Positions 5,481 to 11,434 of a DNA stretch of 64,000 bases are shown here, in pieces. Made by a program: the position numbers and the translations under genes. Below the pieces are notes generated by a model. That model searched no databases. It was not told the DNA's origin and saw nothing but the letters and a program-made list of their open reading frames with translations. The first letter of the stretch is position 1. Each line of letters begins with the position of its first letter. The stretch covers positions 248,001-312,000 of the forward strand of contig NW_005434648.1 in NCBI RefSeq assembly GCF_000315625.1, read 5' to 3'. This stretch comes from Guillardia theta CCMP2712 (lineage: Eukaryota > Protista > Cryptophyta).

Positions 5481-5979
5481 CACATTTCTATTTTCAACTC
5501 TGAGGCGGGTTCAATGCCCCGTCATTGCACTCAGAGGGGGTTGGGGTACTTGAATGGGAGGTTATGGGCGGAACGAGGGGTCACAAATATATACTTGTAC
5601 CCCTACTATATACTGATATTATTTCTAAAAAGATATGGTGGGTAGTCTTTGAGACTGGGTACAGCCAAAGTGAATTCGATATTGAGGGGTAGGGTAGTCT
5701 TGTGATGGGACGGGTGGGGGTAGTGTTTGCGATGATGGCGAAATTTTGTCCAGGGGAGTGATGAAGAGGCACCTTCAGGAGGAGGAGAGGAGAGGTTGAA
5801 GGAGGAGAGGACAAGATAAACGGAGCAATGGATATGAAGAGACCAGGCTCAAAACTTAAGAGAGAAGTCCTGTATCGTTCAGATCGGCTTGTTTGAAGGA
5901 AGAGCAAGAAGAGCCGGGATTTCTTTTTGATTCTGGTCGGGAAGCCGCCAAAATTGACGACCCTGCCAATCACACGATC

Positions 5980-8900
5980 ATGGCATCTGCAAATACGAGC
6001 AGAGTCAGAATCATCACGACGTTCAATCAGTATGAATCAGGTGCTTGTCTTCACAATGCTCGCAGTCTGCCCGCTCAAGTGATTGGACTTTTCCTTCAGC
6101 TATGTCGGATACAAACTCTGTGGTTGTGATCCTCTACACTGCACCGGTCTGTCGACTCGTAGCATATTCTTGCTGTTCCCAGGAAATTCTCAACCTGATC
6201 TAACATCCATGTGCCTCAGGGTTGCCCCCACTGTAACAGGTTCTTGCCGCAGTACAACTCTATCTCGATCGAGGTACCCCTTGACCTGCCCAAGGGGGAG
6301 GAGACTGACTGTCTGTCGCTCCAGTCTGCATGGAACAACATTTCTTTCTACAATGTAAATATCATGAGCGGCGATGGGCTTGGAATAGCGAGGTAAGCTT
6401 TCCCTGGCACTGCGAGAATTCTGGGATGACGCCCGGGGCAGGCGCAACAACGTCGGAGGCGTTCCGCATACTTCCTTCTACTCCCGTGCCAAGAAGCTCG
6501 GAGACATGAGAGGAGACAGGTGGGAGCGATCGCTGCTGCTATCTGCAGCTCATCGCCATGGTCGGCAGCATCTCGGAGTTTCGCAAGCTCCTTGCCAAGC
6601 ACTTGCAAGACCGCACCTTCGTTGGAGCAGGTGGCCCGTCGATCGCTCGCTCCTCCCGAGCTCTAGGTCGCCTCCTCACCGTATCCTCCAGGATACGTCT
6701 TGGGCTCCAGCGCCAACTCGGAGCCTCCCCGAGCCATGGGGAACTCTCGTGAGGAGAATGCCAAGAAGCTTGAGGTCAGCTGGACAACGACTCGCCTTCG
6801 TCTCCCCTCCCTCACCCTGCAGTCTCTCTCCCCTTCTCCCCTCCTTCACCGAGCATCCCTCTATCTTACGTGAGGGAGTGCAGAAGAAATCCGTGCCGGC
6901 CCACAAGATCGAGGCCTTGGAGGGGATGGGGTTCGAGCGCAGCAAGGCGATAGGTAGAGCTGCCTCCTTCTTCCTCCCGCCGCAAGTTTGAACCTTTGGT
7001 CCAGCTGCGCTGCAGAGGACAGAAGGCGATGTGGACCAGGCAGCTGACATCCTGCTGGGAGGTGGCTCGGCTCAGGTGTTGCCTGCGGGGGGGGGGGATA
7101 GGTGGACACTGAAGGAGGGGCAGGACAAAGCTTGGATCGCTGGAGTGTCCATCGACACAGAGGCATCGGACGCTCAGCGAAGGGTTGGAGGAGGAGGAAA
7201 GTGTTGTGACTTCCAGTCATTCCTGAGCAGGAGCTGGAGCAGGGAAGGAAGTGCGGTATTGGGCTGGTCGGTACCTTGCTCTTCCCTTTCATCATCTGAC
7301 CGGAGTCTCCCCACATGATTTTTCTTTTTCGTCCTCTTCCTCCTGCTCTTCCTCATTCTTCTGCTCTTCATTGTCCTCCTACTCTCCGCTGCTCTTCTGC
7401 TCGCTCTCTTGTCAGGGCCTCGTTGATCACTGGGACAACACTGGGCCCAGAGTCTCAGACGTGGTCCCCTACTCGCCTTCAGGTCGTTGAAGTGATGAAG
7501 AGTTTTCCGCCTCCATGACAGTCTCGCAGCTGAAGCAAAGATTTTCAACAAGGGAGACAAGATTGTTGCGATTGATGGTGAATCCGCAGGATGGGAGGGG
7601 GTGAGGGGAAAGGTGGAAAGGAGAGGACACTGATACAGGGATGGGAGAACGGAAGGAAAGAAAGTGGAGGAGGGTAAGGAGGATCTGACTTGTCGCTCAA
7701 GGGGTGGACGTGCGGGGATTTCGAGTCGACCAGCTCAAGAATCTGATCCTTGGGGCTCCGGGCACGCAAGTGGAGATCTCCTTCGTGTAAGGCTGTCTGC
7801 TTCTTCTGACCGCTACCCCCCCCCCCCACCTCGCGTCCTCTGGTGAGTTGCAAGGCAGGCCTGTCTCGCACCTACGCTGGGGAGGAGGACTGCTAGGAGG
7901 AAACGATTCGAAGGATATCGTGAAGGTTTGTACCGATGAAAGTGTGGGAGGAGGAGGAGGAGGAGGAGGAGGAGGAGGAAGGGAGTTGACCGGAAGAGGA
8001 ATTGATAACTGCTTCCATAGGTCATTTTGACCCGAGAGGTCAGGCTGGATACATGCCTGGCAGGTCGCATGAGGGGAAACAGACTGATTGTTTGCTGAGA
8101 GTGGCTGCAGGAGCGAGAGGAAAGGACGTGAAGACCCAGACGATGAAGAAGAGGGAGGAGCCGGCGTCAGCGAAGCCGGCATGGTACTCGACAGGTTGAG
8201 AGTGCGGCACGAGAGCCATCGGCTTCTCATTCCCTTCCTCTCAGTCTGGCAGGACATCAAATCCGGCTCTGAGCGGATGAGCAAAAGTAGCTGCTCCTTG
8301 CTGTGCGGCCCCTGGCTCACGCCTCCTCCTCCCTACAGACCTGGAGAATGGCTTCAAGTCAGCTGGGGACAAGATCGAGGAGGCAGGCAGCGCCATCGGA
8401 AAGTCAGCCTCGGTGCTGCTGATGGATCGGAGGAGGTGGTGCAGGAGACGAGGAGACTGACCGATGGTCCAGAATGGATGGGAGAAAACCTCCAAAGGAG
8501 CCAAAGAGGTAGCGAAGTCCATCAACGAATCGACGGCTTCTGCAAGCGAGACCATGACGGAGGCGGGAGAGAAAGTGAGATCGAGATGCCCCTCACCCGT
8601 TCCTCCTTCCCTTTTTTTTTTGCCTTTCATGCCTTCGCCCTCCACCCTCTCTTCGCTGATGACTTCGAGCTTCGAGCTGCTGCCATTCAGCACTGACCCC
8701 GACACAGATCAAGGAGGCCGTCGTCGTCGACACAGCCGCTCGCAAGAGGATCGCAGGTTCAGGGAGTGACGCCGAATGTTGATCCTGCTGAAGTTGAGAC
8801 GGCAGAACTCGAGGAGGAGAACAGACTTCTCAGAGAAAGGTTGTCGTCCTTCTCCCTGCTCCCTCCACTTCTCACCTCTCTCTCCTTGCCAGGCTCAATC

Positions 8901-9960
8901 AAGCTGCTTCGAGCGGTTCCAACACGCCGAGCGCCAAGTAGGTCTCCCTTACCTCCTGGCCTCGAGTCTGACGTCTGCCTTGCACCTTTCAGGTCCGACG
9001 GCTCAAGGAGAGGTGAGGGCAGCGCTGCGGGGGGGAAGGGACTTTGATTCTCCTCAGAAGCTTCGTTCCGATTCGACGAGGACGCAAAGTCGAACACACC
9101 ACGAGGTCTTGTTGGATTGATCACCCTGGAAACACGCCCTTCCTCTCCCCCTCCTCTCCCCCCCTCCATGCGTTCCTCCCCTCCATCCTCCTTCCCCTCT
9201 CCCCCGATCTTCTTCTCTTCGCTCTCCTTGTGCTCCTTGCCCTGACTGCTTCATCAGGCGATGGATGCCAGGAAGGAGAGTCAACGGACATCCGCAGCTT
9301 CGCAGCTGAGTCCTTCTCCACTGCCAAGTCGCCTAACGTAAGAGGAGGGAGGAGGAGGACGAGGAGGAAGTGCCTGAATGTTGGCAGGTACCCGAGTGCT
9401 CTATCAGAGTGAGGATGACTGACGGAACGGTTATCGAGAAGAGCTTTCCCTCGTCCACGAAGCTCAAGAAGGTTAGGGTTCTGATCCCCTCCTCCCTCCT
9501 CTTCCTCACGTATCTTCTCCCGTCGCCCTGCCTCCTTGTAACGTTTCACTTCCCATCCTCCCACCCGCTTCTTCCTCGTCCTCCCTCATTGTAACTTATC
9601 TCTTCCCATCCTCCCACCGTCTTCCTCGTCCTCCCTCCTTGTAACTTATCTCTTTCCTGCCTTCCTCCTCCCTCCTGCTCTCTCCTCCTCCCTCCTCCTC
9701 ATGTTGCTGCAGGTGGTTGAGAGCGTTCTGCCCTCGGACGACCTGCGCGAGGAGTGGACTCTGATGCTCCCGTGGCCTCCGATGTCGCCAAGAGACTTTC
9801 CTGACCTGCTCCTCAGGTACCCGAGGAAGATATTCGGCGACGAGGACCTCGACAAGACCCTTCTCGAAGCTTCGCTGGTGCCCTGCAGCTGATCTCGCTT
9901 CCTCTGTGATCCCTCAGGCAGGCACCTGCTGCTACCATGAACGTCACCAAACGGAGATGA
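5980..9960 (+). CDS. Multidomain p97/Cdc48 adaptor: thioredoxin (CPHC) - SHP box - UBA - PDZ - helical/coiled region - UBX; more than 25 small exons
   Basis: Manual GT-AG splicing gives one open frame. Trx: MASANTSRVRIITTFNQYESAMSDTNSVVVILYTAPGCPHCNRFLPQYNSIS...NVGGVPHTSFYSRAKKLGDMRG. SHP: TFVGAGYVLG. UBA: IEALEGMGFERSKAIAALQRTEGDVDQAADILL. PDZ: KCGIGLGL...VSDVVPYSPSAEAKIFNKGDKIVAIDGVDVRG..QLKNLILGAPGTQVEISF. UBX: CSIRVRMTDGTVIEKSFPSS...LPYPRKIF..DLDKTLLEASLAPAATMNVTKRR*. Confidence 0.75.
9549..9651. repeat. Intronic tandem duplication, ~50-53 bp x2
   Basis: cttcccatcctcccacc..cttcctcgtcctccctc.ttgtaacttatct appears twice in tandem inside a UBX-region intron. Confidence 0.85.
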
Positions 9961-10096: not shown

Positions 10097-11434
10097 TCAG
10101 TCCGACGAATCCCCACCTATCCCCAAGTTCTTCCTGAGCTGATTGGCGACAGAGATCAGGTTGTCCCTCTCCAGCCTCCCTCGTATCCCCATCTGCCATA
10201 GGAAAGCTTCAACATCCCTCACCGCAGCTTCCAGCAGACCTCATGTAAGTCTTGAGCTCCTAGCCGGATCAAGCCGCTCCCATCCAGCTCCTGCGTCCCC
10301 CTCCCTCGTCACTCCTCCTCAACGATCCCGACTGTCTCACCTGCTTGTACAAGGCGTGCAGAGTCCCGGGCTGGACGCACTCAGGCCCCAGCTGCTGCCA
10401 CAAGAACTCGTGGACCTTGCGGGGGGGCCAGCACCCAACGTCAAGTTCGCGGCTGGCTGCATAGCGGGGAGTTGCCCGCACCTCCTCCTGACCCAAGGAA
10501 GAGTCTCTCGTCGCGCGATCGTGCAGGAGCTGAGGGCTCGAGCGACTTTCTCCTCCTCCTCCTGCCGACTTCGCGACCCCCTTCTCGGCGAGTGCCCCTG
10601 CCGTCCCTCCAGCCCCCAGGGCCTCCCGTCGGCCGGATGCTCCCCCAGCCAGAACCTCGAGTAGTTAAGGACCAGCTGAGTCTTCACCGCCTCCACCTGC
10701 TCAGCGCTCATCCAGTTCTTTGAGGAGAGGATCGGAAGGTTGCGGCCGTACTTGTACCTCAGCAGCGCCTTGAGCGACTCTTGCCTCCCCTCGAAGCGAG
10801 CGAGGACCCCGGGGACCTGGACTACCTTGGAGGGGTTGACCTTCTTGTAGAAGACCTCCAGCCTCTGTTTCATGGTCTTTGCATCCTCCTCCTCCTCCTC
10901 GACCGACTTTGACCGCCGGAAAGACGTCGAGAGACGAGAACAAGACCCCGGCGACCTTCGCTGAGTCCTGACCGGGGAGCAGGACAGGTTTAGGAGGCTA
11001 GGAGACGACGGACTGTGCGCTCTCAGGATCGATCTCTTCTGTGAACTAGCAAGGGAGGAAGATTGATCAAGGGAAGTCTCCAGCAGCTCAACTTTCTTCA
11101 AGGAATCTTGTATCAGAATGTCCAAGTCCTCCAACTCCTGCTCGGTCTCCTCCAGCGAAGCGTGGACCCGCGTTTCAAAGCGATCCTGCGCGCTGGTCAT
11201 TTCATTGTTCAGGTCTATAAATGTTGCCGAGAAATCGTCATAGCTTTCTGACGCGTCCGAGTCCTCGATAGTATCGAGCAGCAGTTCCGATTGCTGTAGG
11301 TTTTGGATGTGTTCTTCAATCGACCCCAAGTTCGCCTGAATCCTCATCATGTCACTCTGAGAGTGCGCTTCTTGCCTTGCAGCACTCCTGAATGACATCT
11401 GCTCCCTGGCTGTCGTTTCATCCTTCAGGTTCAT
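10097..11434 (-). CDS. Coiled-coil protein with a C-terminal SAM domain and an FY..NP.K...KYG module
   Basis: N-terminal heptad-rich region, then KQRLEVFYKKVNPSKVVQVPGVLARFEGRQESLKALLRYKYG. After splicing, WPPRKVHEFLWQQLG...LYKQELDGSGLIRLGAQDLHEMGIRGRLERDNLISVANQL fits the SAM consensus. Stop TGA at 10097-10099. Confidence 0.65.

What the first reader, a model, noticed from the sequence alone, without database searches (positions are those of the whole stretch)
5980..9960. Hidden thioredoxin-SHP-UBA-PDZ-UBX fusion: a candidate redox/ubiquitin/p97 hub
Seen: the ORF track shows only fragments here, but GT-AG splicing joins them into one frame with a CPHC thioredoxin, an FVGAGYVLG motif, a UBA (MGF...LL), a CtpA-type PDZ (GIGL...GDKIVAIDG), an amphipathic/coiled stretch and a terminal UBX (YPRK loop). 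Known: SHP boxes and UBX domains both bind the p97/Cdc48 N-domain, UBA binds ubiquitin, PDZ binds C-terminal peptides and CxxC thioredoxins reduce disulfides. Inference: one protein could capture substrates by C-terminus and ubiquitin, reduce them and pass them to p97. I do not know a characterised protein with all five modules.
Basis: partly seen in the sequence, partly recalled or inferred. Interest (0 to 1): 0.75.

Follow-up and report, generated by a model that had tools for sequence, protein, structure and literature searches.

The report
Thioredoxin-UBA-PDZ-UBX Cdc48 adaptor gene
The alga Guillardia theta really does have one expressed 30-exon gene that joins a thioredoxin, a ubiquitin-binding domain, a PDZ domain and a UBX domain. 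It is probably an unusual helper of the protein-unfolding machine Cdc48/p97, is already in public databases as an unstudied "hypothetical protein", and appears in no paper I could find.

Summary
A complete public transcript ORF (MMETSP Transcript_28351, 605 aa) maps at 100% identity onto window 5980-9960 (+). The NCBI model XP_005834315.1 (GUITHDRAFT_162699, Guillardia theta CCMP2712) also maps exactly, so the gene is already annotated as one gene and is not hidden.

On the transcript protein Pfam calls four domains, all above their curated cut-offs:
- Thioredoxin, residues 13-103
- UBA, residues 160-191
- PDZ, residues 223-291
- UBX, residues 525-600

These features are invariant across every relative that covers them:
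- the CPHC active site and the cis-proline
- an FxGxG[YH][VT]LG SHP-like motif
- the GIGL loop of the PDZ
- the YPR loop of the UBX, which aligns on FAF1's FPR loop

The sister alga Hanusia phi has the same five-module protein. About ten environmental relatives carry parts or all of it. The capped searches found nothing outside this small family. There is no signal peptide and no membrane segment.

Best reading: a cytosolic UBA-UBX type Cdc48 adaptor with a built-in reductase and a peptide-binding PDZ. This function is inferred, not shown. It is a new variant of a known kind, of moderate interest.

The parts
5980..9960 (+). Coding region of GUITHDRAFT_162699 (605-aa isoform), 30 exons: 5980-6040, 6100-6146, 6220-6273, 6325-6392, 6442-6519, 6569-6630, 6692-6774, 6884-6953, 7005-7075, 7124-7183, 7231-7266, 7416-7482, 7530-7577, 7702-7786, 7859-7925, 8021-8063, 8111-8194, 8245-8286, 8339-8412, 8473-8574, 8708-8756, 8806-8839, 8893-8937, 8993-9012, 9061-9105, 9258-9337, 9388-9471, 9713-9771, 9817-9877, 9922-9960 (stop TGA 9958-9960)
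   Evidence: Exact codon-by-codon mapping of transcript ORF P0004 with GT-AG introns only. The NCBI model P0010 also maps exactly.
5893..5979 (+). 5' leader, colinear with the genome. It holds no upstream in-frame ATG.
   Evidence: Transcript-derived P0005 reads through 5893-5979 in frame before the ATG. ORF list.
6016..6569 (+). Thioredoxin domain (residues 13-103, exons 1-6). The CPHC active site lies at 6223-6234 and the cis-Pro (Val-Pro) at 6461-6466.
   Evidence: Pfam PF00085, 1.3e-8, 35.3 bits against a cut-off of 23.5. PDB thioredoxin and PDI a-domain hits. PGCPHC is present in 9 of 9 relatives that cover it.
6618..6705 (+). SHP-like linear motif FVGAGYVLG (residues 120-128), split by intron 6631-6691
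   Evidence: One match in the protein, with 6e-4 expected by composition. F120, G122, G124, L127 and G128 are invariant. Compared with the Ufd1 SHP box in PMC5042407.
6724..6774 (+). Second conserved linear motif of unknown role, PP[RT]AMGxSRxxNAxxLE (residues 135-151)
   Evidence: P136, A138, M139, G140, S142, R143, N146, A147 and L150 are invariant or nearly so.
6908..7054 (+). UBA domain (residues 160-191, exons 8-9)
   Evidence: Pfam PF00627, 6.9e-7, 29.4 bits against 22.4. The two exon halves alone scored 0.08 and 0.18.
7243..7781 (+). PDZ domain (residues 223-295, exons 11-14), with the GIGL loop at 7255-7266. A conserved extra strand VKVILTREV follows in exons 15-16 (7859-8063).
   Evidence: Pfam PF00595, 5.8e-9, 36.6 bits against 23.2. 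PDZ_6, 31.5 against 27. PDZ_2, 25.8, is below its cut-off of 27. PDB PDZ hits.
8182..8908 (+). Long amphipathic, helical and coiled region (residues 358-467, exons 17-23)
   Evidence: Hydrophobic moment 0.41 against 0.21 +/- 0.04 in shuffles. AF2 predicts helices 358-401 and 407-468 at low to moderate confidence. The orthologue gives weak Tropomyosin and Apolipoprotein hits.
9335..9942 (+). UBX domain (residues 525-600, exons 27-30). R532/R534 lie at 9406-9414 and the YPR loop at 9818-9826.
   Evidence: Pfam PF00789, 2.9e-14, 53.4 bits against 21. Exon-wise hits of 1.8e-5 and 4e-3. Ungapped alignment to the FAF1 UBX with YPR on FPR.
9772..9816 (+). 45-nt in-frame intron just before the YPR loop. 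It is spliced out in the transcripts and kept in the NCBI model.
   Evidence: The Hanusia transcript also lacks it. The FAF1 alignment is ungapped only when it is removed.

Best explanation
Window 5980-9960 (+) is a single, expressed, single-copy nuclear gene of Guillardia theta CCMP2712 (GUITHDRAFT_162699).

Shown:
- Its 605-aa product carries, in order: a thioredoxin domain with a CPHC active site, an SHP-like motif in a linker, a UBA domain, a PDZ domain, a ~110-residue amphipathic helix and a C-terminal UBX domain.
- It has no signal or transit peptide and no membrane segment.

Inferred: it is most likely a cytosolic substrate-recruiting adaptor of the AAA+ unfoldase Cdc48/p97, of the UBA-UBX class.
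- The UBX domain (Arg in strand 1 plus the YPR loop) and the SHP-like motif would dock on Cdc48 N-domains in a two-point fashion, as in p47/Shp1.
- The UBA domain would hold ubiquitin chains on the client.
- The PDZ domain would hold an exposed C-terminus or beta-strand of the client.

More speculative: the tethered thioredoxin would reduce disulfide bonds that block threading through the Cdc48 pore. This is analogous to what is proposed for TXNL1 at the proteasome.

Confidence by layer: one gene with these modules about 0.97; Cdc48 adaptor about 0.8; client reduction by the thioredoxin about 0.35.
For: One gene:
- Transcript ORF P0004 maps at 100% as 30 exons.
- The NCBI model and two intron-retaining transcripts cross every junction.
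- The Hanusia phi orthologue is a single 604-aa ORF.

Domains:
- Four Pfam domains score above their cut-offs.
- PDB sequence hits go to thioredoxin/PDI, PDZ and the FAF1/UBXN7/FAF2 UBX domains.

Functional constraint:
- PGCPHC and GVPH are present in 9 of 9 relatives.
- F.G.G[YH][VT]LG is present in 11 of 11.
- YPRK is present in 4 of 4.
- GIGLGL is conserved.

Docking loop: YPR aligns on the FPR loop of FAF1, whose UBX was crystallised with the p97 N-domain. The FPR consensus is taken from PMC10641518.

Partner present: a strong CDC48_N locus exists in the same genome, 1.3e-22.

Cytosolic location:
- The Trx fold starts at about residue 9.
- The maximum 19-residue hydropathy is 0.92.
- In relative L001 a stop codon lies directly before the ATG.

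Precedents:
- Shp1 has UBA, UBX and SHP boxes.
- TXNL1 is thought to reduce substrates at the proteasome entrance (PMC12700817).
- The periplastid s_PUB protein combines thioredoxin with a PUB domain as a Cdc48 cofactor.
Against: - No binding, redox or localisation experiment exists.
- The SHP-like motif lacks the upstream Phe (Ufd1 F225; Asp/Gln/Glu here) and the Asn (Ufd1 N233; Tyr/His here). PMC5042407 lists both among the four residues that make the most prominent contacts, and it includes F225A among the substitutions tested in its binding assays.
- The UBX loop is YPR, not FPR.
- CPHC is the motif of oxidising DsbA-type proteins, so the direction of the redox reaction is uncertain.
- The AF2 models were too poor (mean pLDDT 37.5 and 48.4) to check any fold or interface.
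Confidence: 0.6

Rival explanations
1. These are two adjacent genes: a Trx-UBA-PDZ gene ending at the TAA at 7788-7790, and a separate UBX gene starting near 8180.
For: An in-frame TAA follows ISFV if the GTAAGG donor at 7787 is not used. One MMETSP isoform (Transcript_28350) is split into a 415-aa ORF and a 208-aa ORF.
Against: P0004, P0005, P0011 and the NCBI model all splice 7786 to 7859, 8063 to 8111 and 8194 to 8245. The split isoform is caused by retention of intron 8413-8472, not by a gene boundary. The Hanusia orthologue and the environmental relatives P0012 and P0015 are continuous through PDZ, helix and UBX.
Confidence: 0.02
2. It is a Cdc48 adaptor, but the thioredoxin does not act on clients. 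It would be a redox sensor or switch: oxidation of CPHC would change adaptor conformation, oligomerisation or Cdc48 binding under oxidative stress.
For: CPHC is a comparatively oxidising motif (my own knowledge of DsbA). The Trx lies directly next to the SHP-like motif. The non-catalytic Trx-like UAS domains of FAF1 and UBXD8 have regulatory roles (my own knowledge).
Against: The full catalytic signature (CxxC plus cis-Pro, with PDI-like surroundings) is invariant. That fits catalysis at least as well as sensing. No data separate the two readings.
Confidence: 0.2
3. It is a membrane- or lipid-droplet-associated adaptor. The long amphipathic helix would bind a lipid surface, as in UBXD8/PUX10-type adaptors, bringing Cdc48 to membrane-bound clients. 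This is compatible with the main reading.
For: Very high helical hydrophobic moment over residues 358-430. The orthologue gives a weak Apolipoprotein hit, E 0.057. The nearest solved UBX domains belong to FAF1, FAF2 and UBXN7.
Against: There is no hydrophobic hairpin or transmembrane segment. The helix could instead be a coiled-coil spacer like the long helix of SAKS1. Residues 440-467 look like an ordinary charged coiled coil.
Confidence: 0.2
4. It is a component of the periplastid ERAD-like import machine (SELMA), acting on symbiont Cdc48.
For: Cryptophytes have SELMA. In other algae a thioredoxin-PUB protein and a UBX protein were proposed as periplastid Cdc48 cofactors.
Against: There is no room for a bipartite leader, because the Trx fold starts at about residue 9. 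The transcript 5' ends show no upstream ATG. Relative L001 has a stop directly before its ATG. The SELMA survey found s_UBX only in stramenopiles and s_PUB only in stramenopiles and chromerids, so neither in cryptophytes.
Confidence: 0.03

Closest known systems
p47/Shp1-type UBA-UBX adaptors of Cdc48/p97 (NSFL1C, UBXN2A/B, yeast Shp1)
   Same: An N-terminal-side UBA, a C-terminal UBX, and a short FxGxGxxL(G) linear motif in a linker. This implies two-point docking on Cdc48 N-domains plus ubiquitin binding (PMC10641518, PMC5042407).
   Different: There is no SEP domain: no Pfam hit even at E<=1 on the orthologue. The SHP motif lies before the UBA rather than between SEP and UBX, and lacks the first Phe. 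A catalytic Trx, a PDZ and a long helix are added.
FAF1 / FAF2 (UBXD8) / UBXN7 family (UBA - UAS - coiled coil - UBX)
   Same: The nearest solved UBX domains belong to this family: FAF1 at E 8e-5 with an ungapped alignment, and also the FAF1 coiled coil plus UBX. They share UBA plus UBX and a helical segment before the UBX. They also contain a thioredoxin-fold module, the UAS (my own knowledge).
   Different: The UAS has no CxxC and sits between UBA and UBX. Here the Trx is N-terminal to the UBA and keeps CPHC plus the cis-Pro. There is no Thioredoxin_7/UAS hit. The PDZ has no counterpart.
SAKS1/UBXN1 (UBA - long helix - UBX)
   Same: UBA and UBX separated by a very long helix (predicted helices 358-468).
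   Different: SAKS1 has no Trx, SHP or PDZ.
TXNL1 at the 26S proteasome, and the periplastid s_PUB (thioredoxin + PUB) Cdc48 cofactor
   Same: A redox-active thioredoxin tethered to an AAA+ unfolding machine by a docking module. For TXNL1, co-translocational reduction of substrates has been proposed (PMC12700817; bioRxiv 2025.03.31.646294).
   Different: The docking modules differ (PITH or PUB against UBX plus SHP). Neither has UBA or PDZ, and there is no sequence relationship beyond the Trx fold.

Membership tests
UBX-domain Cdc48/p97 cofactors | UBX domain recognised by the family HMM above its curated cut-off | tested here: met
   PF00789, 53.4 bits against 21, residues 525-600 of P0004. 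Exon 9388-9471 alone scores 25.3 bits.
UBX-domain Cdc48/p97 cofactors | Arg in strand 1 plus a Phe-Pro-Arg loop between strands 3 and 4, which insert into the N-domain cleft | tested here: met
   IRVRM aligns on FAF1 LRIRT, and YPR on FAF1 FPR, in an ungapped alignment. Y574, P575 and R576 are invariant. The Phe is replaced by Tyr.
UBX-domain Cdc48/p97 cofactors | Physical binding to the Cdc48 N-domain | not testable with these tools
   No multimer prediction or assay is available. A CDC48_N locus exists in the genome.
UBA-UBX substrate-recruiting adaptors | UBA domain with an MGF loop and a C-terminal LL | tested here: met
   PF00627, 29.4 bits against 22.4, residues 160-191. M166, G167, F168, L191 and L192 are conserved.
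SHP box (BS1) p97-binding motif | Core Phe-x-Gly-x-Gly-x-x-Leu with both glycines strictly conserved | tested here: met
   FVGAGYVLG at residues 120-128. F, G, G, L and G are invariant in 11 of 11 relatives. 6e-4 matches expected by chance.
SHP box (BS1) p97-binding motif | Upstream aromatic residue (Ufd1 F225) and Asn (Ufd1 N233) that contact the Nc lobe | tested here: not met
   The position three residues before F120 is Asp, Gln or Glu. The N233 position is Tyr or His (compared with PMC5042407). From memory this resembles the Derlin-1 variant; that was not checked.
Catalytic thioredoxin superfamily | Thioredoxin HMM above its cut-off, a CxxC at the N-terminus of helix 1, and a cis-Pro loop | tested here: met
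   PF00085, 35.3 bits against 23.5. CPHC aligns on the CGPC/CGHC of thioredoxins and PDIs, and VP aligns on the cis-Pro. Both are invariant.
Catalytic thioredoxin superfamily | Disulfide oxidoreductase activity | not testable with these tools
   Needs an insulin or DTNB assay.
PDZ domains | PDZ HMM above its cut-off and a G-hydrophobic-G-hydrophobic carboxylate-binding loop | tested here: met
   PF00595, 36.6 bits against 23.2. PF17820, 31.5 against 27. C226, G227, I228, G229 and L230 are invariant among the full-length members.
CtpA/Tsp-type (bacterial, permuted) PDZ | Best match to the bacterial-type PDZ models or structures, and a permuted strand order | tested here: inconclusive
   PDZ_2 scores 25.8, below its cut-off of 27. 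Tail-specific protease PDZ hits have E about 6e-3, weaker than the consensus PDZ and DLG PDZ hits. A conserved extra strand after the domain hints at permutation, but the models were too poor to judge.
p47/SEP family | SEP domain between UBA and UBX | tested here: not met
   No SEP hit at E<=1 on the orthologue or at E<=0.01 on P0004.
FAF/UBXD7/UBXD8 family | UAS (Thioredoxin_7) domain between UBA and UBX | tested here: not met
   No PF13899 hit. The only Trx fold is N-terminal to the UBA and is catalytic in type.
SELMA / periplastid proteins of cryptophytes | Bipartite leader (signal peptide plus transit peptide) | tested here: not met
   The first 20 residues are hydrophilic (mean Kyte-Doolittle -0.37) and the Trx starts at about residue 9. 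There is no upstream ATG in the transcripts. A stop precedes the ATG in L001.

The most novel reading that the evidence does not exclude
A small group of algae (Guillardia, Hanusia and unnamed relatives known only from environmental DNA) has built a Cdc48/p97 adaptor with its own disulfide reductase and a PDZ clamp. Ubiquitylated, disulfide-locked or C-terminally exposed clients would be reduced at the mouth of the unfoldase while being threaded. That would be the Cdc48 counterpart of what is proposed for TXNL1 at the proteasome, in one polypeptide with all the parts visible.
Probability: 0.3. Interest if true: 0.6.

Novelty: new variant of a known kind. Interest (0 to 1): 0.45.

Why it matters
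Cdc48/p97 adaptors are usually described as docking modules joined to ubiquitin or substrate binders. None of the characterised ones I found carries a catalytic thioredoxin or a PDZ domain.

If the thioredoxin acts on clients, this protein would be a natural one-chain model for how disulfide reduction is coupled to mechanical unfolding. That question is currently open for the proteasome cofactor TXNL1.

It would also add a PDZ domain to the list of client-recognition modules used by Cdc48.

There is a practical gain too. The transcript evidence corrects the public gene model at three places, one of them inside the UBX loop region.

Tried and rejected
- Exon-by-exon Pfam scans by reference. Only the UBX exons were significant, the UBA halves were marginal, and the Trx and PDZ exons gave nothing, because the exons encode only about 20-28 residues each.
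- My own joined exon model. All full-length searches used public proteins reached from an exon query. Scripts only checked frame continuity and mapped public proteins onto the window.
I therefore could not view the transcript contigs themselves or the origin of the environmental relatives.
- AlphaFold2. Two runs, with 4 and 13 aligned sequences, gave mean pLDDT 37.5 and 48.4. That is too poor, so no fold search was run.
- ESM Atlas gave no usable hit.
- Literature. Searches for the locus tag and accessions and for the domain combination found nothing relevant.
- The SELMA/periplastid idea was rejected because there is no leader.
- p47 membership was rejected (no SEP domain). FAF/UBXD8 membership was rejected (no UAS between UBA and UBX).
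- The apparent lack of the Trx N-terminal half in relatives P0006/P0012/P0015 proved to be an artefact of intron-blind gene calling. The CPHC exon lies one intron upstream in L001, L002 and L003.
- My first hand model differed from the transcript at three points: the acceptors at 6875 and 7228 were wrong, and exon 7124-7183 was missing.


Full report
**What is in the sequence**

The window is eukaryotic. The bacterial-style ORF list shows only short fragments between 5980 and 9960, and the window has no tRNA genes. Reading the three forward frames, I built a GT-AG model by hand for the 5' half. It has 13 exons and 280 codons with no stop. It contains APGCPHC, FVGAG|YVLG (split by an intron), a UBA-like MGF...LL and a PDZ-like GIGL...GDKIVAIDG...GTQVEISF. 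Directly after ISFV there is an in-frame TAA unless the GTAAGG donor at 7787 is used. So whether this was one gene or two was a real question.

**How the spliced product was tested**

I searched exon by exon by reference and never sent my own joined model to a search or fold tool. Scripts only checked frame continuity and mapped public proteins onto the window.

- Exon-wise Pfam gave UBX for 9388-9471 (1.8e-5, above the cut-off) and for 9713-9889 (4e-3). The two UBA exons gave marginal halves, and the very short Trx and PDZ exons gave nothing.
- A full-library phmmer search with the 59-residue piece of the UBX region encoded at window:9713-9889:+ returned a 604-aa protein, P0001. It is an MMETSP transcript ORF of Hanusia phi (UniProt A0A7S0EUU0, 'UBX domain-containing protein').
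- tblastn of P0001 against the window aligned every segment of it colinearly from 5980 to 9957.
- A word search with P0001 returned P0004, a 605-aa MMETSP ORF marked 'type:complete'. Its 90%-identity cluster also holds XP_005834315.1 / EKX47335.1, 'hypothetical protein GUITHDRAFT_162699 [Guillardia theta CCMP2712]', UniProt L1JGX6.

**Gene structure**

I wrote a script that accepts only exact codon matches and GT/GC..AG introns. It maps all 605 residues and the stop codon of P0004 onto the window as 30 exons (20-102 nt, median 61). The 29 introns are 44-241 nt long (median 52) and all are GT-AG.

- The NCBI model (P0010, 609 aa) also maps exactly. This identifies the genome as G. theta CCMP2712, in agreement with earlier scan notes and with the assembly size of 87.1 Mb in 669 contigs.
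- The NCBI model differs from the transcript at three places: it uses an acceptor at 8794 instead of 8806, it skips exon 9061-9105, and it keeps the 45-nt in-frame intron 9772-9816.
- Two further transcript-derived ORFs are intron-retention isoforms. P0011 with P0020 retains 8413-8472, and P0005 retains 8287-8338. Both still use every junction between the PDZ and the helix.
- The two-gene alternative is therefore refuted.
- The gene is single-copy. A six-frame search of the genome with P0004 finds only this locus plus unrelated PDZ domains.

**Domains**

On P0004, which is identical to the window's exons, Pfam calls four domains above their curated cut-offs:

| Domain | Residues | E-value | Bits (cut-off) |
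|---|---|---|---|
| UBX | 525-600 | 2.9e-14 | 53.4 (21) |
| PDZ | 223-291 | 5.8e-9 | 36.6 (23.2) |
| Thioredoxin | 13-103 | 1.3e-8 | 35.3 (23.5) |
| UBA | 160-191 | 6.9e-7 | 29.4 (22.4) |

PDZ_6 is also above its cut-off, while PDZ_2 is just below. The Hanusia orthologue gives the same picture, with no SEP or UAS/Thioredoxin_7 hit even at E<=1.

Against solved structures:
- The Trx domain aligns over its whole length with thioredoxins and with the a-domains of PDI A3/A4. CPHC falls on their CGPC/CGHC, and the Val-Pro falls on the cis-proline.
- The PDZ matches a consensus PDZ and the DLG PDZs best, and tail-specific protease more weakly.
- The C-terminus matches the UBX domains of FAF1, FAF2 (KIAA0794), UBXN7 and UBXN4.

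With the C-terminal ORF P0020 as the query, the alignment to the FAF1 UBX is ungapped over 74 residues. It puts IRVRM on LRIRT and YPR on FAF1's FPR. This holds only if the 45-nt intron is removed, which favours the transcript over the NCBI model. The FPR loop between strands 3 and 4 is the p97-binding signature (PMC10641518).

**The SHP-like motif**

FVGAGYVLG occurs once, at residues 120-128. From the protein's composition, 6e-4 such matches are expected. It lies in the linker between Trx and UBA.

The Ufd1 SHP box is FRAFSGSGNRL. In it F225, F228, N233 and L235 make the main contacts, and the two glycines are strictly conserved (PMC5042407). The motif here keeps the F228, G230, G232 and L235 positions. 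It has Asp/Gln/Glu at the F225 position and Tyr/His at the N233 position. It is therefore a plausible but non-canonical SHP box.

**Helix, localisation and partner**

- Residues 358-467 are predicted helical in both AF2 runs.
- Residues 358-430 are strongly amphipathic: mean hydrophobic moment 0.41 against 0.21 +/- 0.04 in shuffles, with none of 1000 shuffles reaching it.
- There is no transmembrane segment. The maximum 19-residue hydropathy is 0.92.
- The N-terminus is hydrophilic, and the Trx fold begins at about residue 9.
- The transcript 5' ends show no upstream ATG.
- In the environmental relative L001 a stop codon lies directly before the ATG.
- The protein should therefore be in the host cytosol or nucleus, not in the periplastid space or the ER lumen.
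- A strong CDC48_N locus is present in the same genome, together with at least three other UBX loci.

**Relatives**

Three word searches found only this family:
- G. theta and H. phi
- two lineages of 639-703 aa proteins with UBA-PDZ-helix-UBX (P0006/12/13 and P0007/15)
- fragments with Trx-UBA-PDZ (P0018, P0019, P0021, P0022)
- fragments with UBA-PDZ (P0008, P0016, P0017)

Identity to G. theta is 45-65%. The ESM Atlas was blank.

The 639-703 aa proteins seemed to lack the first half of the Trx domain. Fetching related metagenome contigs and aligning them showed that the CPHC-bearing exon lies one GT-AG intron upstream (L001, L002) or in the same exon (L003). The truncation is an artefact of intron-blind gene calling.

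Conservation counts across all sequences that cover each site:
- PGCPHC: 9 of 9
- GVPH: all
- F.G.G[YH][VT]LG: 11 of 11
- GIGLGL: conserved, with one Val for Ile in two members
- YPRK: 4 of 4

A further motif, PP[RT]AMGxSRxxNAxxLE, right after the SHP-like motif, is as conserved as the domains and is unexplained.

**Mechanism**

- Shown: one expressed gene, four HMM-supported domains, and conserved catalytic and docking signatures.
- Inferred from established knowledge of the families: UBX (with SHP) docks on the Cdc48 N-domain, UBA binds ubiquitin, and PDZ binds C-terminal or beta-strand peptides.
- Speculative: the tethered thioredoxin reduces client disulfides so that Cdc48 can thread them.

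Two precedents exist for a thioredoxin attached to an unfolding machine. TXNL1 at the proteasome entrance is thought to reduce substrates during translocation (PMC12700817). The thioredoxin-PUB protein s_PUB was proposed as a periplastid Cdc48 cofactor in stramenopiles and chromerids.

The main alternatives for the added parts are a redox-sensing Trx and a lipid-binding role for the amphipathic helix.

**Comparison and novelty**

The protein works like a UBA-UBX adaptor. It is not a p47/SEP member, because it has no SEP domain. It is not a FAF/UBXD7/UBXD8 member, because it has no UAS between UBA and UBX, although its UBX is closest to theirs.

No paper in the library names the locus tag or its accessions. 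Neither the domain-combination search nor the Guillardia theta/UBX/Cdc48 search turned up a paper describing this protein or its architecture.

The protein is already in NCBI and UniProt as an automatically named hypothetical protein, so the gene itself is not a discovery. What is new is the recognition of a conserved five-module adaptor confined, as far as the capped searches show, to a small family: Guillardia, Hanusia and unnamed environmental relatives. I rate it a new variant of a known kind, with interest 0.45.

**Limits**

- Both AF2 models were too poor for fold searches.
- The taxonomic origin of the environmental relatives is unknown.
- Nothing here is human or viral.

Noticed in passing
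window 8794-8839, 9061-9105, 9772-9816: The public NCBI model XP_005834315.1 differs from the MMETSP transcript at three places. It uses the acceptor at 8794 instead of 8806 (adding 4 residues), skips the 45-nt exon 9061-9105, and keeps the 45-nt in-frame intron 9772-9816. Keeping that intron would insert 15 residues right before the UBX YPR loop. The Hanusia transcript and the ungapped FAF1 alignment favour the transcript version.
   Followed up: yes
window 8287-8338 and 8413-8472: Intron-retention isoforms exist. Transcript_28350 keeps 8413-8472, which splits the ORF into 415 aa (Trx to mid-helix) and 208 aa (helix plus UBX). A JGI transcript contig keeps 8287-8338 and runs out of frame. Whether these are regulated or just unspliced RNA is unknown.
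   Followed up: partly
window 6724-6774 (residues 135-151): A linear motif, PP[RT]AMGxSRxxNAxxLE, directly after the SHP-like motif is as conserved as the folded domains in all relatives. It matches none of the Cdc48-binding motifs I know (VIM, VBM). It may be a further docking or regulatory site.
   Followed up: partly
L001:2335-3096 and L003:1816-2250, compared with window exons 5-15: Intron density differs sharply between relatives. Residues 80-317 are spread over 11 exons in G. theta but are one uninterrupted exon in environmental relative L001. In L003 residues 3 to about 150 form one exon. The introns of L003 contain short tandem repeats that translate as ...NLNPKP*TLN....
   Followed up: partly
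window 7859-8063 (residues 298-333): After the PDZ comes a variable Gly-rich loop and then a conserved strand-like segment, KDIVKVILTREVRLD. The structure models were too poor to tell.
   Followed up: partly
window 10337-11434 (-): A 365-aa open frame on the opposite strand lies just downstream of this gene. It is probably part of the neighbouring gene and was not examined.
   Followed up: no
G000:C183:57439-57705, C65:384103-384195, C164:24822-25134: Three other loci in the same genome have UBX-domain exons above the Pfam cut-off. They were not examined for Trx or PDZ neighbours, but the whole-protein search found no paralogue of this gene.
   Followed up: partly
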